A stretch of DNA of 63,235 nt, counting the filler, from Dugesia japonica (Eukaryota), in NCBI GenBank assembly GCA_001938525.1. It is 6 parts of 6 records of this genome, joined end to end, with 100 filler letters (N's around TTAATTAATTAA, not from the genome) between each part and the next. Parts side by side here need not be neighbours in the genome. Positions count along the whole stretch, not along the records: positions 53,586 to 63,235 come from MQRL01632683.1; 5 more parts are not named here. One strand, 5' to 3'. Below, in pieces: positions 13,512 to 63,235 of the stretch. Numbering within the stretch: the first letter of the stretch is position 1; every line of letters starts with the position of its first letter. The notes under the pieces were generated by a model. That model ran no database searches. It was given only the letters and a program-made list of their open reading frames with translations, and was not told the DNA's origin. The translations under genes and the position numbers were made by a program.

Positions 13512-13699
13512 CTAAAATTAAAATAATTATTTAAAACAATCTAAATGCATTCATAAAAATATTAAAATTATTTTACTTTCAAATAAATTATTTTTTATAT
13601 AGAAAAAAGTATATAGATTCTTAAAAAGGGATAATTTTGGGAAAATATAATGGGTTGAAACAATTGAAGCATACAGAGAACAAATATTTCGTACCATAA

Positions 13700-14280
13700 A
13701 TTACATGGCAGATCAAGTGTTACGGTATCATTTCAAATTAATAACGTTGAATGTTTTTTAGATATAGGAGCTCGAATTAACTTTGATTTTGAGTTGCTTA
13801 AATAATTACATTTAAAAATGAGTGATGAAAGATTGTGGTGTGCAAACGATAGTACACTAAAAAATTTTTGGGAAGTTAGAACTAGAATGACAATAGATGA
13901 AGTTTTCAAAGATGTTACTTTCTTATTCACAGAAATAGTGACACCAGATCTGGTTGAAGGAATATATATGCAGAAGATTTTTGGATACTAATTTTATACG
14001 GAAAATGGACAGTAAAGTTGAAAATTACATTTGTAATATTGAAGAAAAATTTGTGAGACAAATTAAAAAGGGAGAGCGATTGATAAGAGCCTTAAATACT
14101 CTGAATATTAAAAAGGTTTACCGGTTATTGAAAATAATTGAAGGTAAAGTTGTTTTCATAACATGTAGGATGCACATATTTAACAAAGCACAAAATAATT
14201 ATGTTGGGTGTTTTCCAACAATAAGCTCGAATATGTTAAAGTACTTGACTATGAATGGTTTACCTGACTTCACTGATTAG
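13700..14280 (+). mobile_element. Gypsy-like protease/pol remnant
   Basis: VECFLDIGARIN resembles a retropepsin LD(T/S)GA motif; degenerate downstream frame 13954-14280. Confidence 0.45.
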
Positions 14281-53585: not shown

Positions 53586-54099
53586 ATCGTTTTGATCTTC
53601 GCAATTGAAAATAAATTTTGAAATGAAAATTTTAAAATTTTAATTTCTGAAATGAAATTTATAATATGCTCCATATTTCCTAGAAAATACTCAATAAAAT
53701 TAAATTTTAATGTTATAATTAGTTATCAATGAAAATTGATTTTAATCAGATTAATTTAAATTGTGTTTCTATTTAAACGCTTATAACCAGAATGAATTGA
53801 GCAATAATTCCTGAAATGGCATAGCCGAAATATTGAACTATCTATAAAAATAGAAAAACATCGTTTTCATTTTTGCAATTGAAAATAAATTTTACTTATT
53901 GAAATTTGTTTTTCAAAACATTTGTTTATTGTTTATTATGGCTAAAAGAGCAATGCTATCGTTGAATTATCAGCACAGCAGTTAAAATATCAGTTTATGG
54001 TTGAAATATTAGCATCATGAGAAAATAATCAACATTACAATTGAAGTAACAGCATTTTGATAGAAATGTTAAGATTGAAACGCCCAACTCATACCAGAT

Positions 54100-55560
54100 A
54101 TGCCAAAGATTGTTAATGGCTCTAAATTATTATGTGTCAATGATTTAAATTTGAACTGTTGAAAGAAATCGGCTAACAGAAATATAAGTCCAGTAAATTC
54201 TTAAAACCGGTGATTGTCCATATTTATATTGCTTTCTGATAATCTTGATTACTATTTTCCTTCCATCTTAGTGGCATTGTTGTTGTTTCAATCATAACTT
54301 GTAAACAGGCATAATTGTAAGGAAATATCCTTTTAAATTTGTTATTCTGATATTTTTAAAGAAACGAATTTAAGAATTATTATTGGACAATAATATGTAT
54401 AACGTTTACGAGAAAGGAATACGAGGTGAAATCACATTCGTTAACAAACATCGGGGCCGTATGTGACTAAAATATGAAACTTCTGAAATCAATAACCTAT
54501 ATGGCTCGATATTGATTGAAAAGTTGCTTATAAGGATTTCGAATGGGTTTACTCTGATTTGGATAAGGTTTTAGAAGAGTGCAGAACATCAGAATTGAAA
54601 ACTTTTTCATCTGGTTATTCATTAGAGATGGATATAGAAATTTCTGATGAGATTCACTAATATCTTAGTGATATCCAGGTTGCACCGGAACACCAAAATC
54701 CTTCAGGTTATAAGGTAAAGAAATTATTGCTGGCACACCATCCAAATTAGAATTGTGTAGTGCATTGCAAATTTACTTTTCGTTAGGTTTGCAAGTAATA
54801 AATGTTCATAGAGCAGTAAAATTTGTTCACGTTCCGATTTTCAAATATTATATGGATAAAAGCACTATATTAAAATCGTAGAGAAAAACAGAATTTGAAA
54901 AAAAACTATCATAAGTTGCTGAATGATAGTCTATATGGTAAATACTTTGAAAATAAAAGTAAAGAATAAGCCTTCAAATATGCAATTCAGCAAAAAAACC
55001 TGTTGACCTACGTATCAAAACTAAGGTTTCGGAAAACAATCCAAATAGATAACGACCTAATAGCAGTCCACCTTAATAAAGAATGTGTGTTTAAACTGGC
55101 AAAGTTATATAGGGCAGACATGATTAAATTTATTGAAATTAAGAATGTACTAACTACAGTATAAAAGGCAAGAAAAATATCGAATACAAGAAAAATGCAA
55201 GATCAATATAGTGGCAGGAATCATATGTAGTATTGTCTTGGAGGTTAAGGATATTAAACTAGAAAGGTTATTAGAGCTGATAGTAAAATTCCAATTATTA
55301 GACACATCTAATTATAATACAAGCCATTCAGTTTATAATATGAGCTTAACCTATGTCATAATAAGAATAAGATATTTATTATTTCAGAACTTGAAAAATA
55401 ATATTGCAAAACATCAAAAAACCATAAATTATAAGAGATCTGCAGAAAGATCTGTAAATTAAGTATACAAATTACAAATGAAATCAACTGAAAAACAAAT
55501 TGAATTATAAATCCTTATAAAAATCCTACAAAATGTCACCATGTTCAACGAATACACATG
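54100..55560 (+). pseudogene. Decayed Polinton pPolB polymerase domain (second lineage, no intein)
   Basis: YEKGIRG, INNLYG (motif A), FEW, KVKKLLLAH, KLLNDSLYGKYFEN (motif B), degenerate motif C 'VAGIICS', LLDTSNY. Confidence 0.75.
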
Positions 55561-55799
55561 ACAACATTTTTGTGAAATGATAGAATCAATTCTTTTAATT
55601 TTTGAAAACCGAATTTATTTCAATCAACATATTTTTCTCGCTTTCCAGGATAAATTTTTGATTAAAATACTATGCTTAATATTTGCACAAATAATATGCT
55701 CACCAAAATCAAACTATTAAAACACTAAATCTGAAATTTTCAGTCACAGTCTCAATTTGGAAAACAAAACAATTTTCTGTTACTTTTAATATTCACTAA

Positions 55800-57720
55800 A
55801 CCCTTTTATATCTGACAAAGGTTGAATTTCATAAAACGTGATGGAGTAGATAGATAGGAGCGCATTGGAGGAAAGACTTTTCACCGGGTAGAAAATTTTT
55901 TACATCAACAAATCAGATTACTTTAGACGATTAGCTGATGGATAGTGGCGCACGACACTATTAATATACAGTGATGTACAATGACAATTTGGTATCAACT
56001 AACTCAGAATTTAAAACTGAACATTTTTCTATATGGTTTGCCTGTTGCCCTGTAATTCTTGCATTTCCTAGTCCAAGCATGACTATAGGCAAGTCAATGG
56101 ACCATCTCCGTTCTGAAGTTGTACAATGTGTTCGAATAGCATATTTTATGGTTTGATGAAGTCTCTCAATTTTACCGTTACATTGTTGATGGTATGCTGT
56201 TGTGTTGCGGTGATCGATTCCGTATCTCTGGCACATTTCTTTGAATTGATTTGAAATAAATTGTCTCCCTTGATCAGTAATTATGATTTCTGTTGGGACA
56301 AATCTACTGATCCACACTTTTTTGACCGCATCTACAATAGCTTTTGTTGTAATCTCATTTAATGGTATGGCTTCAGACCAAGATGTTTCACGATCGATCA
56401 TCGTAAGAATGAATTGCTTTCCTTCACATTGAGGTAGAGGGCCGACAATATCCATGTGCATCACTTTGAACCGTCCTAATTCTGGAAGACGTTTCAGTGG
56501 GGATTGCGTTTGACGAGTTATTTTTTTTGATTGACATCTGTGGCATTGCCTTGTCCATTCTCGAAGGTCTGATTTCATCTTTGGTCATACAAAGCGAGCT
56601 CAAATGAGATATCTTGTTTTCTTGGCCCCTGAATGTGCAATGTTGTGCAATCTGTCAAACTCAGTCTTTCTGTATCGCTTTGGTAGCAAATTTCTGGATT
56701 GTGTGGAAGTATTTGTCAAGATTCTGTTGATCTCTTTTATTTTTAGTGATTGATGTTGTCTGAGTGAAGCGTTTGATTGTTGGTCTTCGATCAATTCATC
56801 CTTTCTTATTGAAAATATTTCGCCTTCAGATAGTTCTTCTGGAATTCTAATTAAGAAGTCAGCTACGACGTTTTCTGATCCTTTCACAGATTTAAGCTGG
56901 AATGAGAACTGGCTGATAAATTCAACATGACAACATTGCCTGTTTGTAGGGTTCTTCATCGATTGAATATATAGCAGTGGCTTGTGATCTGTTAAAATTG
57001 TGAATTCGCTGCCTTCTAAGTAATGCTTGAAATTCTTGATGGATAAATAGATGACTAAAAGTTCACGGTCAAACGTTGAATATCTTTGTTCTGTCTTGTT
57101 TAATTTTCTTCAGAAAAATGCGATAGGTGCAAGTTTGTCGTTGTCTTCGTGATTCAGACTTGCTTCAAGTGCGTTATTTGATGCGTCCGTTTGAAGTATT
57201 AACTTTTTATTTGAATCAGGTAAAGTCATATTTGTAATTCGATTCAGTGCTGCTTTGATATCTGAGAAAGGCGTTGTGTTGTAGATTATAATTGTGGTCT
57301 GTTCTATTGGAATAATCATTCTTTCCCAATCCTTGCACTTTATTGTTGTCGTGAATAATTAGATTTCCTCTACATTCTATTATAATGCCAATGAATGTCC
57401 ACTTGAAATTTTATGGAAGCCCAACGATGTTAAAGCACAAAGTGCGTTGTCCCTGAGTTGAAATTCTGCTTCCACTAGCTGAAATTAGTTGTCTGGTCGT
57501 TTCACATTGATCAGTGTGAAATTGTTTGGCTGGTAGAAGACTAACATCTGCTTCTGTGTCAATTAGAAAATTTATTACCTGGCTTTGATAATTTACTGGA
57601 ACAGTGAATATTGTAGAGATGAGTTCCGGTTCAGGAGTGATAGGGTTCTAAATCACCGGAATTATTAAGAACCTTTCTCGTTTTCATTAGTTTGTTTCGA
57701 ATTCCGATCACATGGTTCAC
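55800..57720 (-). mobile_element. Gypsy pol remnant (protease, RNase H, integrase; RT apparently deleted)
   Basis: FLIDTEADVS; LQTDAS...YSTFDRELL...TDHKPL; H..AHSG...C..CQ; HMDIVGPL...TDQGRQF...NGKIERLH. Confidence 0.85.
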
Positions 57721-57862
57721 GGCATTTTCCGGCTAATTTCCCATATTTGAGGTAATAAGTAGATGAAGTTAGTAAGACTTGGGCTCAAGGTAGTAAAATT
57801 CATCCCTAAATATTCAAATTTAAGATGCCAATCGCCAAAACCGCGATATGGCAATAAAATCC

Positions 57863-57930
57863 CTAATAATATCCAATAATATCTATAATAATCCAATAAT
57901 ATCCAATAATATCCCAATAATATCAATAAT
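57863..57930. repeat. Tandem 10-bp (CCAATAATAT)n repeat upstream of pPolB
   Basis: About six imperfect units, direct observation. Confidence 0.8.
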
Positions 57931-58093
57931 CGCCCCCTAAATTATCATTTTCATATTTCCCATCGGTATTTGAAAAATAAAAACTTAAAAAAATGTAAAA
58001 ATATAAAATTTATTTCCCATTGGTATTTTTAGATTTTTTATAAAATTTATTTGAAGAGGTAATAAGAGGTGTGCTAAATTTATCCTTTATAAA

Positions 58094-61000
58094 ATGGCTA
58101 CAGCGAATAATGTGATTAAATGTAAAACATGTGGAAAAACATTTAGAAATAATACAGGTTTATTAAGTCATCTTACAGCAAAACCATGTACAAGACCTAA
58201 AGATAAAATTTATACTTGCATAAAATGTTTAGAAAGATTTGAAACAGAATCTGGATTACAAAAACATAAAAAATCAGCGTCTTGTTGGAATCCAATTAAT
58301 GTAAATTTACATTGTGAAGTTTGTAATAAAAATTTTAAAAGACAAGATCAGGCTAAATTACATTATAATGGGGAAGAACATAAAAAGAAAGTTAGAGATA
58401 TTCAGGCGTCACAACAAATTGAACAATTAGAACAAAATGAACTTGAAGTACCCGAAGAAGAAGAATCATTAATAAGACCAACAATAGCAAATTTATTTAA
58501 CACCGAGTCATATCCAGATTATGAAATTCAAATTGGATTAAATTCAATATTGAAAATGAAAAAAGATATAAGTGAAAAAAATTCACAATCAATTTTAGAT
58601 TTTCATCAAGAGATTACAACTATTGCAAGAAAAGTTTTTGAGAGTCAAGGTAAATATAAATTTCGAATAATTGCAAATGGGGTATATAGTAAAGAAACTA
58701 AAACAAATATTTTCCATTCTTATTCCAATAATAATATTGTTTACATAAAAAGGAAAGTTCCCCAAGTTGCACTTATGGCATTAAAAAATTTACAAATATT
58801 TATAAGACATGAAGCTAGAAATGAATCAAATTGGAATTTAAATTATATTAGAGATTTTACAATTGAATTTGTGAGATATGAATCATTAGTAGGGGGCACA
58901 TATAAAGAATTACCATTTATAAAAAATGGAGTGATTAATATAAAAAATTATGATAATAAATGTTTCTTATACTCGATTTTGGCACATAAATATGTAGTTG
59001 ATAATCTAACAAGATTAACTAATTACATTAATCGTTTATCAGAATTAAAATATGATGAATTAGATTTTCCAATGAAAATAGATGACATAAAAAAATTTGA
59101 AAGATTGAATAATTGGGAAATAAATGTTTTTGAAGTAAATAAAAATAAAAAAATAACACCACTTAGAATTAAACATTATGAGACAAAAACCAAGCCTGAG
59201 GAAAATAAATGTAATTTATTAATTTATGAAAATCATTATTTATTATGTAGAGATGTTAATGTTTTTGCACAAAATAAAAAAAATGCAAACCAATTATGTT
59301 TGGGTTGTATGAATGGTTATCATAGTAAAGAATTATTAATATCACATCAAAAAGAATGTATTTATCATGAGGCGGCAAGTATTACATTTCCAAAAGAGGA
59401 TTATTATGAATTTAAAGATTTTGATTTTATAAATAAAATTCCATTTACACTTTATGGAGATTATGAAACTTACACCGACACTAAAACTGAAAAACAAAAA
59501 CCATTATGTTTAGGAGTTCAAATTGTAAGTCAATATCAAAATTTAATTTCAAATTATTATATGAAATTTGATAGTGAAAATAATATTGAAAAATTTTTAA
59601 GATTTCTAAAAAATTTTAATAGAATTGTTGATGAAATTTTAGAAGAAAAATTAATAAAAGTTTACACAGGAACCGATCACCCAGATTTCACTGAAGGCAC
59701 CAAATGTAGATATTGCGAGAAAATAATAACTGAAAATCCAGTAATTGATCATGATCACTTTAATGGCAAATTTCGCGGATATGCACATCAAGTTTGTAAT
59801 CTTAATGACCGATCCATAAAAAATTTATTCATACCATTTTATTTTCACAATGGAGCNGGGTATGATAACCATTTATTTTTTAAGGAATTAATGACAAAAT
59901 ATCCCAATGATGTTAAAAAATTAATACCCCATTCCGATGAAGAATACATTGCATTTCATTATAAAAATATTAGGTTCCTAGATTCCAATAAATTATGCCC
60001 ATTTACACCCGTAGAATAAATGGGTAAAATGTTATTAAAAATGAATAAATATCCAATTACACAATCTCATCGTTTAGCCCCAAAGAAAGTATCATATCCC
60101 TATAGTTATGTTAAAGGAAAGGATTTGAATGAAGTTCAAAAATTATTAAAAAGAAATTATACTCCAACAAAGGATGATTTTTACAATGATTTGAGAGAAT
60201 CCCCAATGAGTGAAAATGATTATCAACAATTTTTAATTGACTATGAATCATTTGATAACATGTTAGAATACACCCATCATTATAATAAATTGGATGTAAC
60301 AATCCTTGCAGATTTTATTGAAATCCTCAGAGACTTTTGTTTGAAATATTATAAAATCGATCCATGTTATTGCTATACCGCACCAAGCTTAACGTGGAAA
60401 GCGGGAATGCGATTTACAAGACAAAAATTAAAATATGCAAAACCAGAAACCTATAATATCTTTTTAATGATTGAAAGGGGAATTCGTGGTGGATATTCGG
60501 GATTGTGTGGTAGTAGATTACTATTACCTTTTAATGAAAAAACAAGGAAATGATGTACAATTTCGTTTATAATGAAATGCAATCACGATTAGGAAGAGAA
60601 AATTATGATATCCATTATTCAGATAGTGTAACTTTTGACACCCCAATATTAATAAGAGAAGTAGATGAGAAACCTGAAATTAAAATGATATCAGAAATTT
60701 CTGAAGATTTTAAAGAAAGATCAGACGGGAAAGAATATTCAGAAATAGAAAATTATGAAATATGGACAAAAAGTAATTGGGTAAAATTAAAGAAAGTAAT
60801 TAGACATTTTACAAATAAAAAGATTTATAGAGTTATTACAAAAATGGGAATAGTGGATGTAACACAGGATCACTCACTAATAGCTGAAAATGGATTATTA
60901 ATTAAACCATCTGATTTAACTAAAAAAACTAAATTACTTCATAATAAATTATTTGAATTACAAACCGGTAAAGCATATCATGGCATAAATAAAATTATAA

Positions 61001-61730
61001 GAGATAAAGTGTCACTTGCAAAATTATATTACATTGGATCATTATTAGGATTTAATTTAATTATTGTAGAAGAAGATGGGGGATTTAATATTTTAGAATC
61101 AGAAAATGAAATTGAAACTAATGTTCAAACAGTTAGATTTTTAAAAGAAGCCAATGAATGGGTTTATGATATTGAAACTGAAGATGGAACATTTAATTGT
61201 GGATTCCCATTAATAATAAAAAATACAGATTCATTATTTGTTGAAGTGTTTGGAACAGAAAATCTAAAAAATTAGAAAGTACTTTAGGGAGTAAACTTTT
61301 CCGAATGAAAGATGAGTTACCCACCGGTACTATAACTAAAGCTTGTTTTTTAAGAGCTAAACCATATGGATATGATTATATTGAAGATGATAGAATAATT
61401 TTTAATAAAACACATAAAGGAGTTCAATCTTTTAATAAAATTACGATGGATCATTTTGAACAAGTATTAAATAATCCTAAAGCCGTAGTTATGGGAACAA
61501 ATCATTCTATAAAATCTAAAAATCATGAACTTGGAGTCGTTAATCAAGAAAAGATTGCATTTAGTGCTTATGATGATAAAAGAGTAATATCCAAATATGG
61601 GTGTAAATCATGGCCAGCAGGAAATAAATATTATTGTGAGGACTGTGAAATGTATCATTTGAGAGTAGATGAAATGAATAATAATTTACCATGTTCATCT
61701 TTATTATACTTTAAATTTTTTTATTTAGAA
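58094..61730 (+). pseudogene. Polinton/adintovirus protein-primed DNA polymerase B, disrupted (ORFs 58094-60019, 60020-60553, 60550-61275, 61305 onward)
   Basis: 3 Zn fingers; DNKCFLYSILAH...ENHY; ExoI YGDYET; EndoVII CRYC..DHDH..GKFRG.AH..CN; ExoII FHNGxGYD; FLDS; YPYSY; ExoIII YNKLDV; GIRGG; motif C YSD/TDS; MKDE..LRAK.Y..KGV..DDKR. In-frame TAA at 60017-60019, motifs A and B missing, frameshift at 61266-61271. Confidence 0.92.
60625..61224 (+). mobile_element. Mini-intein (200 aa) inserted in PolB motif C (YSD|TDS)
   Basis: Block A SVTFDTPILIR (Ser1); block B VDVTQDHSLI (TxxH); block F WVYDIETEDGTF; block G IIKN followed by Thr+1. Excision restores Y-S-D-T-D-S. Confidence 0.93.
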
Positions 61731-62288
61731 ATGGTGAATGAAACGAATAAAGGGAATATAACAGAGGAATCATTAGCAAAATTANTAAATTCTGATAAAT
61801 GTAGATCTGTAAGAATTGATGGTAAAAATTATTGGATTAGTAAAAAAGTTAAAAATGAAATTAAAAATCACCCTAAATATAAAGAGGGGGGTTTTGCATT
61901 TCTTGCAGCAATACCAGCAATTATTGCCGGATTGGCAGGAGCTGCTGGAGTTGCTTCAGGAGTTGCAAGTACCGTTTCAAATTCTAGAGATGCAATTTTA
62001 AAACAAAAACAAATTGAACAAATTGAAAAAGGATCTGGATTATATTTAAAAAATGATGAAGGCAGTGGATTATATTTAAAATCTGACTCCGTTGGTTCTG
62101 GATTATATTTAAAACCATATGAAGGCACTGCAATTCATAAATATTTTAAAAATATTTTCGATGATTTAAAATTAAAAGATTCAACTAAAAAATTTAAAGA
62201 TGGAATTGAGATTGAAATTAAAGGTGATGGTTTATATTTAAAGCCCTATAATTATTATGATAAAAATGGACATTCGGACGAGGATTAG
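61731..62288 (+). CDS. Polinton PX-like / adenovirus core-or-membrane-lytic-like precursor protein (in frame with pPolB C-terminus)
   Basis: KEGG|FAFLAAIPAIIAGLAGAAGVASGVASTV hydrophobic segment followed by GSGLYLK x3 and GDGLYLKPY; own ATG at 61731. Confidence 0.7.
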   Translation: MVNETNKGNITEESLAKLXNSDKCRSVRIDGKNYWISKKVKNEIKNHPKYKEGGFAFLAAIPAIIAGLAGAAGVASGVASTVSNSRDAILKQKQIEQIEKGSGLYLKNDEGSGLYLKSDSVGSGLYLKPYEGTAIHKYFKNIFDDLKLKDSTKKFKDGIEIEIKGDGLYLKPYNYYDKNGHSDED

Positions 62289-63183
62289 AGAGTTAGAAGA
62301 ATTATTAAAAACTCAGAAAANNNNNNNNNNNNNNNNNNNNNNNNNNNNNNNNNNNNNNNNNNNNNNNNNNNNNNNNNNNNNNNNNNNNNNNNNNNNNNNN
62401 NNNNNNNNNNNNNNNNNNNNNNNNNNNNNNNNNNNNNNNNNNNNNNNNNNNNNNNNNNNNNNNNNNNNNNNNNNNNNAGAACCTGAAATTAAAGATGAAA
62501 TAGAACCTGAAATTAAAGATGAAATAGAACCTGAAATTAAAGATGAACCTCCACCTGATGATATAAATGAAAATATTAAACAAATTTTAAAAAAAGAAAC
62601 TACAACACCGTTTTTTCCAAAGAATATAAATAATAATAAAAAAACATTAGCATTTCCAAGTTTAATACCTCAACTATATGATTATACATCAGATGGTGAA
62701 AGAAAATATCAAGTATTTTTCTATCCAGATGTAAACAAAAATATTTTATTATTTACTGATGNTGATGAATTAAAATTTTCAGTTAATGAAAAAATTCATA
62801 AATATTCTGAAATATTTTTAGATATAATTTTTGGTAGAAGAGAAAAAATAAAAAATACTCAAGAAACAAAAGATCTTATTGAAATATATTTTAATGAAGT
62901 GTTAATGAGAAAACCTATTAATGATTCTTATTATAATTTTTTAGAAAGTATGTTAGATAAACCTAAAAGGGGTCCTTCAAAAAGTGGTTTGAAAAAAAAA
63001 CCTGGAGATGGATTTAATCCTTTAAATTTATTTGAAAAGTTAACATTATTAATTTTGGCAGCAAAATCCGGACACGATCATTTAAAAAATGATATTAAAA
63101 AAGTTTATAAAAAATTAAAAATTATGGGAATAATTTCTGATAAAATTTATGATAAATATAAGGGGAAATATTTTACTAAATAA
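62257..63183 (+). CDS. Polinton/adintovirus-like conserved ORF with EPEIKDEI repeats (contains N gap)
   Basis: C-terminal NPLNLFEKLTLLILAAKSGH..L..DI motif, homologous to 27-918; overlaps the upstream ORF as in compact viral genomes. Confidence 0.75.
   Translation: MIKMDIRTRIRELEELLKTQKXXXXXXXXXXXXXXXXXXXXXXXXXXXXXXXXXXXXXXXXXXXXXXXXXXXXXEPEIKDEIEPEIKDEIEPEIKDEPPPDDINENIKQILKKETTTPFFPKNINNNKKTLAFPSLIPQLYDYTSDGERKYQVFFYPDVNKNILLFTDXDELKFSVNEKIHKYSEIFLDIIFGRREKIKNTQETKDLIEIYFNEVLMRKPINDSYYNFLESMLDKPKRGPSKSGLKKKPGDGFNPLNLFEKLTLLILAAKSGHDHLKNDIKKVYKKLKIMGIISDKIYDKYKGKYFTK
62479..62550 (+). repeat. 24-bp coding tandem repeat GAACCTGAAATTAAAGATGAAATA
   Basis: About three visible units next to an N gap that probably hides more. 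Confidence 0.85.
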
Positions 63184-63235
63184 GAAATATAACCCACGAA
63201 GTGGGTTTGTTTTATACATTATTTTACATTTTTAA

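What the first reader, a model, noticed from the sequence alone, without database searches (positions are those of the whole stretch)
60625..61224. Intact mini-intein in the catalytic motif C of an endogenous Polinton/adintovirus protein-primed PolB in an animal-like genome
Seen: the motif YSDTDS is split by exactly 600 nt (200 aa), starting with SVTFDTPILIR and ending IIKN before TDS. It contains TQDH (block B) and VYDIETEDGTF (block F) and has no stop or frameshift. Established: Ser1, TxxH, terminal Asn and Thr+1 are the standard class-1 splicing residues. The D|TDS position is the pol-c site used by inteins in archaeal and giant-virus PolBs. Inteins are known from microbes and their viruses; to my knowledge they are essentially absent from animal nuclear genomes (hedgehog Hint domains aside), and I do not recall one in Polinton pPolB. 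Inference: an intein crossed from an RNA-primed (probably NCLDV-type) PolB into a protein-primed Polinton polymerase and entered an animal germline with it.
Basis: partly seen in the sequence, partly recalled or inferred. Interest (0 to 1): 0.93.

Follow-up and report, generated by a model that had tools for sequence, protein, structure and literature searches.

The report
Giant-virus-type intein in Polinton polymerase
A 200-residue self-splicing protein insert (an intein) of the family normally found in giant-virus DNA polymerases sits exactly inside the catalytic YxDTDS motif of a protein-primed polymerase gene of a Polinton/adintovirus-like element, but this copy of the polymerase gene is itself broken and its host organism could not be identified.

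Summary
Window 60625-61224 (+) is an open 200-codon insert that splits Y-S-D | T-D-S. It has Ser1, T80-x-x-H83, Asn200 and Thr+1.

It is a real HINT-fold mini-intein. It reaches the TIGR01445 cut-off and has 1191 relatives at E<=1e-10. The AlphaFold model (pLDDT 93) matches solved inteins and the PolB inteins of giant viruses.

Its relatives sit at the same D|TDS junction of Pol-delta-like, RNA-primed PolBs on giant-virus-like contigs. This is the published Mimivirus 'YGD|TDS' pol-c site. The closest are 25-26 of 30 residues identical at the C-terminal junction and 84% identical in DNA there.

The host gene is a Polinton/adintovirus-type protein-primed PolB with an HNH insert. None of 108 related pPolB loci carries this intein, and 73 show an uninterrupted DTDS. 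The papers I could read report nothing like it.

- The polymerase gene around the intein is a pseudogene: one in-frame stop, two frame changes and one deletion of about 260 codons. The open intein is therefore a fossil, and its intactness is compatible with chance.
- An animal host could not be tested.

It is a new member of a known kind and moderately interesting.

The parts
60625..61224 (+). Mini-intein, 200 codons: Ser1, block B T80-Q-D-H83, block F V180-Y-D-I-E-T, Lys199-Asn200. No homing-endonuclease domain.
   Evidence: It keeps 28 of the 29 family columns that are >=90% conserved. The AF2 model has pLDDT 93 and pTM 0.89. Foldseek against PDB returns inteins. Foldseek against BFVD returns giant-virus PolBs, TMq up to 0.91.
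60616..60624 (+). N-extein half of polymerase motif C (Y-S-D).
   Evidence: Relatives read H/Q-Y-M-D-T-D-S or x-T-D-T-D-S without interruption.
61225..61233 (+). C-extein half of motif C (T-D-S). Thr+1 is the downstream nucleophile.
58094..61630 (+). Protein-primed family B DNA polymerase gene (pPolB) of Polinton/adintovirus type, broken: 1 in-frame stop, 2 frame changes, 1 internal deletion of about 260 codons. The end given is the last base with pPolB homology; the last open piece runs on into the next gene.
58103..58384 (+). C2H2-type zinc fingers at the N-terminus of the pPolB.
   Evidence: Pfam zf-met (2.7e-8), zf-C2H2_jaz and zf-C2H2.
58898..59263 (+). Region with an invariant Cys and a nearly invariant His. 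This is the best-modelled part of the N-terminal piece and is a candidate vOTU-like protease domain of Polinton pPolBs.
   Evidence: Alignment A1 invariants C290 and H381. pLDDT is 82-92 over residues 280-360. The architecture is described in PMC11161782. The assignment is inferred, not shown.
59693..59803 (+). HNH / endonuclease-VII-like zinc-binding insert in the exonuclease domain.
   Evidence: Pfam PF02945, E=2.8e-4 here, and above the cut-off in relatives. HNH inserts in pPolB2 are described in PMC10748475.
61725..62288 (+). Downstream reading frame with a glycine-rich membrane segment and four G-x-G-L-Y-L-K repeats. Unnamed accessory gene.
   Evidence: A homologous 204-aa ORF at L006:3074-3688 has the same layout. 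No Pfam match.
62257..63183 (+). Further open reading frame of the element, with a masked N run and 24-nt tandem repeats. No homologue found.
55961..57700 (-). Neighbour: decayed Ty3/gypsy-like retrotransposon pol (RNase H, integrase), G+C 0.37. It is not the Polinton integrase.
   Evidence: PF00665 1.6e-15 and Integrase_H2C2. RT_RNaseH_2 2.2e-10. Composition.
54084..55345 (.). Neighbour: an older, heavily decayed second pPolB relic with 18-34 stops per frame. It covers the polymerase-domain region up to about motif C.
   Evidence: blastx outer bounds and counts.

Best explanation
The insert is a genuine HINT-fold, class-1-type mini-intein of the 'pol-c' allele family that populates giant-virus (Nucleocytoviricota) PolB genes. 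Here it lies at the equivalent D|TDS position of motif C in a protein-primed PolB of a Polinton/adintovirus-like element.

In an intact gene it would work as follows. The polymerase precursor is translated with the intein inside its catalytic motif. Ser1 starts an N-O acyl shift, assisted by Thr80 and His83. Thr+1 attacks the resulting ester. Asn200 cyclises and releases the intein, and Y-S-D-T-D-S is rejoined by a peptide bond.

I infer that it reached the pPolB by non-allelic transfer at the DNA level from a giant-virus PolB gene. The target would have been the few shared codons of motif C, in a cell where a giant virus and a Polinton-like element replicated together. It has no endonuclease of its own, so any spread would have needed an endonuclease supplied in trans or plain recombination.

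The copy in this window is a dead, integrated relic. Its polymerase gene is broken and lies among other transposon relics, so the intein here is a recent fossil and not a working part.

Shown: the insert, its residues, its fold, its family, its site, the type of host gene, the breaks, and its absence from 108 related loci.
Inferred: splicing competence, the direction and mechanism of the transfer, and co-infection.
For: Intein identity:
- Exact in-frame 600-nt split of YSD|TDS.
- TIGR01445 at its cut-off.
- 1191 relatives at E<=1e-10.
- 28 of 29 highly conserved family columns are kept; the only deviation is E->Q at position 81.
- AF2 pLDDT 93. Foldseek against PDB returns inteins only at the top: 5o9i E=7.6e-9, then 9hth, 2lcj and 4e2t.

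Family and site:
- 143 of the 150 best relatives have the junctions D|S-V-x-x-D-T-P ... N|T-D-[SG].
- The seven scanned carry PF00136 and/or PF14890, and six have PF00136 broken at or near profile position 227/228.
- The extein of P0034 matches Pol delta at 1e-100 and archaeal PolB at 1e-31.
- The PolB on L003 is flanked by a D5-like primase, topoisomerase II and thymidine kinase.
- BFVD fold matches: PolB of Pithovirus LCPAC302 (TMq 0.91, rmsd 2.0), Marseillevirus LCMAC201, Megavirus courdo11, Heterosigma akashiwo virus 01 and Klosneuvirus.
- The published Mimivirus site is 'YGD|TDS' with Ser1, Asn and Thr+1 (PMC549080).

Closest relatives:
- P0099 and P0055 are 25-26 of 30 residues identical across the C-terminal junction and about 58-61% identical (phmmer) in the core of the N-terminal splicing domain, query residues about 55-133.
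- DNA is 84% identical over 87 nt and 73% over 179 nt.
- Four of the five DNA differences in the last 45 nt of the intein are synonymous.
- Similarity ends at the intein boundaries plus the Y-x-D and T-D-S codons.
- In a neighbour-joining tree the intein nests inside the 'KN|TDS' clade; the five nearest sequences checked sit in RNA-primed PolBs.

Non-allelic habit of the family: the same family sits in type IIA topoisomerases at DxD|TDG and in an XRN exonuclease.

Host gene:
- The pieces match full-length pPolBs of 1265-1380 aa on 15-20 kb IMG/VR contigs.
- One of these is 52% identical to 'PolB [Corynactis coral adintovirus]'. Many relatives carry PF03175 or PF02945.
- The closest relatives lie next to a double-jelly-roll capsid gene, an rve integrase and an A32-like ATPase.

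Rarity: none of 108 pPolB loci has the intein, and 73 show an uninterrupted DTDS.
Against: - Splicing was not and could not be tested.
- The penultimate residue is Lys, not the classical His. A large share of the family shares 'KN'.
- The Pfam PF14890 score is below its gathering cut-off, and there is no sequence-level PDB hit.
- The host polymerase is a pseudogene, so there is no evidence that an intein-bearing pPolB was ever functional.
- Only one such locus is known, and no intact intein-plus copy was found.
- The nearest sampled donor-type intein is only about 50% identical overall, so the donor lineage is unsampled and the date and direction of transfer are inferred from distribution alone.
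- The neighbour-joining tree has no support values.
- Within the window the element is assigned to Polintons through its pPolB alone. No capsid gene, Polinton integrase, packaging ATPase or terminal repeats are present in the piece.
Confidence: 0.85

Rival explanations
1. One reading: the host is an animal, the intein-bearing Polinton/adintovirus lineage was active in its germline, and the intein is or recently was splicing-competent there.
For: The pPolB family includes a cnidarian adintovirus PolB and a Stylophora protein. HNH-bearing pPolBs are described in nematodes (PMC10748475). The piece is integrated among eukaryotic transposon relics. The intein keeps 28 of 29 conserved columns. Invertebrate iridoviruses are listed among viruses with polymerase inteins (PMC5784728).
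Against: Nothing in the piece identifies the host. HNH-bearing pPolBs also occur in oomycetes, and relatives are common in environmental viral contigs. The best relatives are only 34-35% identical. This copy is dead. Giant viruses carrying this intein family are mostly known from protists and algae.
Confidence: 0.3
2. Assembly chimera or contamination: a giant-virus read carrying a PolB intein was joined into a Polinton contig.
For: Only one locus is known. The piece contains masked bases and a gap. The polymerase shows an internal deletion and an 18-nt perfect inverted repeat, which point to rearrangement.
Against: The junctions are codon-exact and restore the pPolB-type motif (H-Y-S-D / T-D-S-L-F-V-E), not the giant-virus flanks (V-Y-G-D / T-D-S-V-F-M). 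G+C of the intein (0.248) equals that of the pPolB (0.249). The closest known giant-virus intein is only 73-84% identical in DNA, so no sampled donor read could have produced it.
Confidence: 0.04
3. The intein is an old resident of a pPolB lineage, or pPolBs were the source and giant-virus PolBs the recipients. It is then not a recent import from a giant virus.
For: Both enzymes are family B polymerases that share motif C. The donor is unsampled (about 50% identity overall). pPolB diversity is poorly annotated, so intein-bearing pPolBs could have been missed.
Against: None of the 150 best relatives matches the window's pPolB pieces. All those checked are RNA-primed PolB, topoisomerase II or XRN. 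None of 108 pPolB loci has the intein. None of the 120 best pPolB relatives has an intein Pfam mark. The intein nests inside the clade hosted by giant-virus PolBs.
Confidence: 0.07

Closest known systems
Mimivirus PolB intein and other Nucleocytoviricota PolB 'pol-c' inteins (PMC549080; Phycodnaviridae, Iridoviridae and Mimiviridae in PMC5784728)
   Same: Same insertion point (Y-x-D | T-D-S), same Ser1, terminal Asn and Thr+1, and the same sequence family (E down to 1e-42). The fold is the same as the PolB inteins of Pithovirus, Marseillevirus, Megavirus, HaV01 and Klosneuvirus.
   Different: The host enzyme here is a protein-primed PolB with no detectable sequence similarity to those exteins outside motif C. 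This is a 200-aa mini form without an endonuclease. The host gene is a pseudogene in a cellular genome.
Archaeal PolB pol-c allele inteins (position III of archaeal PolI; PMC549080, PMC4104785)
   Same: Same allele class by insertion site, according to PMC549080.
   Different: Archaeal exteins did not appear among the relatives I checked. The extein checked is Pol-delta-like, not archaeal. Direct similarity to archaeal inteins was not tested here.
Inteins in viral-like DNA polymerases on nuclear scaffolds of Klebsormidium, Tetrabaena and Hondaea, and non-allelic intein spread in Anaeramoeba (PMC10710043)
   Same: Inteins of giant-virus affinity residing in eukaryotic nuclear DNA. Viruses are proposed as vectors, and non-allelic moves between unrelated host proteins are described.
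   Different: Those polymerases are endogenised giant-virus (RNA-primed) PolBs or cellular genes. No Polinton or protein-primed polymerase is mentioned.
HNH and VSR nuclease inserts in Polinton pPolB2 (PMC10748475), read as traces of intein invasions in PMC11161782
   Same: The window's pPolB carries the HNH insert. The literature already suspects that mobile elements invade pPolB genes.
   Different: Those inserts are free nuclease domains without a HINT splicing domain, and they lie in the exonuclease part. Here a complete splicing domain sits in motif C and has no nuclease.

Membership tests
Intein (HINT-fold protein-splicing element, class 1) | In-frame insert inside a conserved host motif, with a contiguous motif in intein-less homologues | tested here: met
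   YSD|...|TDS in the window. Uninterrupted x-D-T-D-S in 73 related pPolB loci.
Intein (HINT-fold protein-splicing element, class 1) | Nucleophile at position 1 (Ser/Cys), block B T-x-x-H, C-terminal Asn, and a +1 Ser/Thr/Cys | tested here: met
   Ser1, T80-Q-D-H83, Asn200 and Thr+1. These columns are invariant or nearly invariant in alignment A2. The penultimate residue is Lys rather than His, as in many relatives.
Intein (HINT-fold protein-splicing element, class 1) | HINT fold | tested here: met
   AF2 pLDDT 93 and pTM 0.89. The top 30 PDB matches with E<=1e-3 are inteins or a BIL domain, with TM up to 0.70 on the target.
Intein (HINT-fold protein-splicing element, class 1) | Match to curated intein profiles | tested here: inconclusive
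   TIGR01445 scores 24.8 bits against a cut-off of 24.5 and is met. PF14890 scores 16.8 against 35.8 and is not met. TIGR01443 scores 11-13 against 15.6 and is not met. Pairwise homology is overwhelming.
Intein (HINT-fold protein-splicing element, class 1) | Autocatalytic splicing | not testable with these tools
pol-c intein allele of family B polymerases | Insertion between D and T of Y-x-D-T-D-S | tested here: met
   143 of 150 relatives share D|S...N|TD[SG]. Mimivirus is published as 'YGD|TDS'.
pol-c intein allele of family B polymerases | Host is an RNA-primed PolB (Pfam PF00136/PF03104) | tested here: not met
   The window's extein pieces have no PF00136 or PF03104 match and no similarity to the 150 intein hosts. 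The host is a pPolB. It is the same site in a very distant branch of family B.
Polinton/Maverick (adintovirus-like) element | Protein-primed PolB with an N-terminal TP and vOTU region | tested here: inconclusive
   Sequence: E=1e-44, 1e-25 and 8e-7 to full-length pPolBs, which are 52% identical to a named adintovirus PolB and carry PF03175. Cys and His are conserved in the candidate vOTU region. The N-terminal model is poor (pLDDT 63.5). Its best fold hits are Y-family polymerases (E 0.01-0.1), the fold that PMC11161782 reports for TP domains. The window's own pieces miss PF03175.
Polinton/Maverick (adintovirus-like) element | rve integrase, double-jelly-roll capsid, penton, A32-type ATPase and Ulp1/adenain protease in the same element | not testable with these tools
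   The piece ends about 1.6 kb after the pPolB. The only rve belongs to a retrotransposon relic. The relatives L001 and L002 do have a DJR capsid, rve and an A32-like gene.
Polinton/Maverick (adintovirus-like) element | Terminal inverted repeats and a 6-bp target duplication | not testable with these tools
   Only one side of the element is in the piece, and no convincing terminal repeat was found.
Endogenous element of an animal genome | Flanking sequence assignable to an animal | tested here: inconclusive
   Flanks are transposon relics only. There are no tRNA or Rfam hits, no exact protein on record, and the best retrotransposon integrase relative is 52% identical and unnamed.

The most novel reading that the evidence does not exclude
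A lineage of Polinton/adintovirus-like elements acquired a giant-virus PolB intein by direct DNA exchange while replicating in the same cell as a giant virus. It then carried a splicing-dependent polymerase into the germline of a multicellular animal. This would be the first intein in a protein-primed polymerase and the first in an animal nuclear genome. It would also be physical evidence that Polintons meet giant viruses as virophages do.
Probability: 0.2. Interest if true: 0.8.

Novelty: new member of a known kind. Interest (0 to 1): 0.5.

Why it matters
Until now inteins of the pol-c allele were known from archaeal and giant-virus RNA-primed PolBs. Finding one at the same catalytic motif of a protein-primed PolB extends that allele to the most distant branch of family B polymerases.

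It also adds a third nested layer of genetic parasitism: an intein inside a Polinton inside a cellular genome. And it is sequence-level evidence that a Polinton-like element and a giant virus once shared a cell and exchanged DNA. That fits the proposed kinship of Polintons and virophages.

It gives substance to the published guess that the nuclease inserts in pPolBs are traces of intein invasions (PMC11161782).

If the host proves to be an animal, the statement that metazoan genomes lack inteins (PMC5784728) would need a footnote, though only for a dead copy in a mobile element.

Tried and rejected
Searches that found nothing or could not answer the question:
- A sequence search of the intein against PDB chains gave no hit at E<=10. 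The fold search was needed instead.
- A profile of the N-terminal pPolB piece against PDB gave only zinc-finger noise.
- The AF2 model of that piece was poor (pLDDT 63.5), and its fold search gave nothing at E<=1e-3.
- Pfam PF03175 does not match the window's own pieces, so the pPolB assignment rests on relatives.
- Exact look-ups of four window ORFs found no record.
- The retrotransposon integrase gave no close or named relative, because the length filter excludes full pol proteins. It does not match the retrotransposon next to the closest Polinton relative.
- There are no tRNA or Rfam features.
- A close-relative scan of IMG/VR with the intein found nothing.
- Kapitonov & Jurka 2006 and Krupovic & Koonin 2015 are not held.

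Readings I rejected:
- The in-frame stop as a reassigned codon. There is only one such codon in about 1400 otherwise open codons of an AT-rich gene.
- The rve ORF as the Polinton integrase. It sits with RNase H and Integrase_H2C2 on the other strand at a higher G+C.
- A hedgehog, BIL or other non-splicing Hint domain. The terminal Asn, Thr+1 and family membership argue against it.
- The older pPolB relic (54084-55345) as the displaced missing part of the main gene. It is far more decayed, and one alignment overlaps the motif C region.

Whether that relic lacks the intein is only weakly supported: one HSP at E=3.5e-6.
Full report
**1. The observation**

The piece (53586-63235) is AT-rich, with G+C about 0.28 overall and 0.25 in the part discussed. 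In the frame containing 60625 the translation reads H-Y-S-D, then S-V-T-F-D-T-P-I-L-I-R ... V-Y-D-I-E-T-E-D-G-T-F-N-C-G-F-P-L-I-I-K-N, then T-D-S-L-F. The insert is exactly 600 nt (60625-61224), is open throughout, and splits the family B polymerase motif C as Y-S-D | T-D-S. T-Q-D-H is at residues 80-83. With this base composition about one random codon in ten is a stop, so an open frame of this length is not a chance event (my estimate).

**2. It is an intein**

- NCBIfam TIGR01445 (intein N-terminal splicing region) matches residues 2-86 at 24.8 bits against a cut-off of 24.5. Pfam PF14890 matches weakly (E=6e-3, below its cut-off), and the short C-terminal model TIGR01443 is below its cut-off.
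- An exhaustive phmmer search of 1.84 billion representative proteins found 1876 relatives at E<=1e-3 and 1191 at E<=1e-10, at 30-60% identity.
- I aligned 143 relatives delimited by both junctions. The window's intein keeps 28 of the 29 columns in which one residue is present in at least 90% of sequences. The only deviation is Glu to Gln at position 81.
- With a 20-sequence alignment (A2) AlphaFold2 gives pLDDT 93 and pTM 0.89.
- Foldseek against the PDB returns inteins at the top: TFIIB Mvu mini-intein at E=7.6e-9, Aes123 PolB1 split intein, Pab PolII, RadA and others.
- The 200 residues are an N-terminal and a C-terminal splicing half with a small strand-helix-strand insert between them. 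There is no LAGLIDADG, HNH or other nuclease match.
- Mini forms are common in the family: 55 of 143 are 230 aa or shorter.

**3. Which intein**

- In 143 of the 150 best relatives the junctions read D | S-V-x-x-D-T-P ... (K/H)-N | T-D-(S/G). That is the same site and the same Ser1, Asn and Thr+1.
- Seven of them were scanned with Pfam. Six are RNA-primed family B polymerases (PF00136; five of these also PF03104) interrupted at or near profile position 227/228. The seventh is a 256-aa fragment that matches only the intein model.
- The extein of P0034 matches Pol delta at 1e-100 and archaeal PolB at 1e-31.
- The contig of P0030 also carries a D5-like primase-helicase, a one-chain topoisomerase II and thymidine kinase among many ORFans. 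That is the look of a giant virus.
- The fold search in BFVD names the relatives: PolB of Pithovirus LCPAC302 (TM 0.91 on the query, rmsd 2.0 A, 30% identity), Marseillevirus LCMAC201, Megavirus courdo11, a phycodnavirus, Heterosigma akashiwo virus 01, Klosneuvirus and Pandoravirus.
- Ogata et al. describe the Mimivirus intein at 'YGD|TDS' with Ser1, terminal Asn and Thr+1, and assign it to the 'pol-c allele' of archaeal PolI (PMC549080).

**4. How close**

- The nearest sampled inteins are in P0099 and P0055. These are 1810-1815-aa PolBs on AT-rich contigs (L004 has G+C 0.22), and their inteins are about 450 aa.
- Identity is 25-26 of 30 residues across the C-terminal junction, and about 58-61% (phmmer) in the core of the N-terminal splicing domain, query residues about 55-133.
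- DNA identity is 84% over 87 nt and 73% over 179 nt.
- In the last 45 nt of the intein, four of five differences are synonymous.
- Similarity stops at the intein ends, apart from the codons for Y-x-D and T-D-S. This is the pattern expected of a mobile unit sitting in unrelated flanks.
- In a neighbour-joining tree (195 columns, no support values) the window's intein nests inside the 'KN|TDS' clade. The five nearest sequences I checked sit in RNA-primed PolBs.
- The same family also sits in type IIA topoisomerases at D-x-D | T-D-G and in an XRN exonuclease. Moves between unrelated proteins that share a short acidic motif are therefore part of its record. Similar non-allelic spread with viruses as vectors is described for Anaeramoeba (PMC10710043) and for giant viruses (bioRxiv 10.1101/299784).

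**5. The host gene**

I searched the open pieces around the intein separately and never joined them.

- The N-terminal piece carries C2H2 zinc fingers and an endonuclease-VII/HNH-like insert. Its relatives reach 34-35% identity.
- The two closest relatives lie on long contigs of one ENA sample, next to a double-jelly-roll capsid gene, an rve integrase and an A32-like ATPase. That is a Polinton gene set.
- Twenty-six IMG/VR contigs of about 15-20 kb and 80 metagenome contigs encode relatives. Full-length ones are 1265-1380 aa, with motif C about 160 residues from the end.
- Three window pieces match them at E=1e-44, 1e-25 and 8e-7.
- One of these full-length proteins (on L016) is 52% identical to 'PolB [Corynactis coral adintovirus]'. 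Many of its relatives carry PF03175 or PF02945.
- HNH inserts in Polinton pPolB2 of terrestrial nematodes and oomycetes are described in PMC10748475. The TP-vOTU-Exo-Pol layout of Polinton pPolBs is described in PMC11161782.
- The window has a conserved Cys and His in the expected region.
- A poor model of the N-terminal piece gives weak fold hits to Y-family polymerases. This is the fold that PMC11161782 reports for terminal-protein domains. I count this as suggestive only.

**6. State of the gene**

The pPolB gene (58094 to about 61630) is broken. It has one in-frame stop codon, two changes of reading frame, and one internal deletion of about 260 codons of the polymerase domain relative to every full-length relative. 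I do not give the places.

The stop is not a reassigned codon, because it is the only one in about 1400 otherwise open codons. With about four lesions in about 3.5 kb, a 600-nt stretch stays untouched about half of the time. The intact intein frame therefore says that the copy is young, not that the intein is under selection now. The high conservation of family positions and the synonymous bias show purifying selection up to the recent past.

**7. Surroundings**

- Upstream, on the other strand, lies a decayed Ty3/gypsy-like pol with RNase H and integrase, at G+C 0.37.
- Further upstream (54084-55345) lies a second, much older pPolB relic with 18-34 stops per frame. One alignment runs through its motif C region without room for a 600-nt insert (E=3.5e-6). 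This is weak evidence that it never had the intein.
- Downstream of the pPolB are a frame with a glycine-rich membrane segment and four G-x-G-L-Y-L-K repeats, which has a homologue in another Polinton-like contig, and one more ORF without relatives.
- This is integrated DNA of a eukaryote with nested mobile elements. No feature names the organism.

**8. Rarity and novelty**

- None of the 108 related pPolB loci fetched (L001, L002, 26 viral, 80 metagenomic) has a match to the intein. The two giant-virus control loci did match. Seventy-three of the pPolB loci show an uninterrupted D-T-D-S.
- None of the 120 best relatives of a full-length pPolB has an intein mark in its precomputed Pfam domains.
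- None of the 150 best intein relatives resembles the window's pPolB.
- Full-text searches for intein together with Polinton, Maverick, pPolB, protein-primed or self-synthesizing found no report. The adintovirus paper and the nematode pPolB paper do not mention inteins.
- The nearest statement is that nuclease inserts in pPolBs 'result from intein invasions' (PMC11161782).
- PMC5784728 states that inteins are absent from metazoan genomes.
- Two key Polinton papers could not be read, so priority cannot be excluded.

**9. Verdict**

This is a real intein of the giant-virus pol-c family, at the equivalent site of a protein-primed PolB of Polinton/adintovirus type, preserved as a fossil in a dead gene copy of an unidentified eukaryote. 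The mechanism of arrival is inferred: non-allelic transfer from a giant-virus PolB in a shared cell, targeted by the motif C codons. I rate it a new member of a known kind, interest 0.5.

I searched the pieces of the broken gene separately. Consensus lines printed by the alignment tools were not used.

Those ranges coincide with piece ends.

No part of the piece looked human.

Noticed in passing
window 61725-62288 (+); L006:3074-3688: A frame directly after the pPolB encodes a glycine-zipper-like membrane segment followed by four G-x-G-L-Y-L-K repeats. A 204-aa ORF in an IMG/VR Polinton-like contig has the same layout. Neither has a Pfam match. It may be a conserved, unnamed accessory (possibly virion or membrane) protein of this element group.
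   Followed up: partly
window 62478-62572: 24-nt tandem repeats encoding E-P-E-I-K-D-E-I lie directly after the masked N run in the last ORF of the piece.
   Followed up: no
window 57846-57925: Short CCAATAATAT-type repeats lie just upstream of the pPolB start, between the retrotransposon relic and the gene. Whether they belong to the element's terminus is unknown.
   Followed up: no
inside the pPolB gene, window 58094-61630: An 18-nt perfect inverted repeat with arms 600 nt apart (I15). About 0.01 such pairs are expected by chance in this AT-rich stretch (my estimate). It hints at a small inverted duplication during rearrangement of the gene.
   Followed up: no
window 54084-55345: A second, far more decayed pPolB relic with pieces on both strands and 18-34 stops per frame. 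One alignment crosses its motif C region without room for an intein.
   Followed up: partly
window 55961-57700 (-): A Ty3/gypsy-like pol relic (RNase H and integrase) with clearly higher G+C (0.37) than its surroundings (0.25-0.30).
   Followed up: partly
proteins P0053, P0119, P0174, P0069, P0128: The same intein family sits in type IIA topoisomerases at D-x-D | T-D-G and in an XRN 5'-3' exonuclease. One family therefore uses several unrelated host proteins that share a short acidic motif.
   Followed up: partly
L003:11918-12244 and 13538-14131: The giant-virus-like PolB of P0030 contains two separate stretches that match the window's intein. This suggests two inteins of related type in one polymerase gene.
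   Followed up: no
window 58094-60016 model: The weak fold hits of the N-terminal model are nearly all Y-family DNA polymerases (Dbh, Dpo4, iota, kappa, eta, Rev1), each over about 115-125 aligned columns. This is the fold that PMC11161782 reports for terminal-protein domains of pPolBs.
   Followed up: partly
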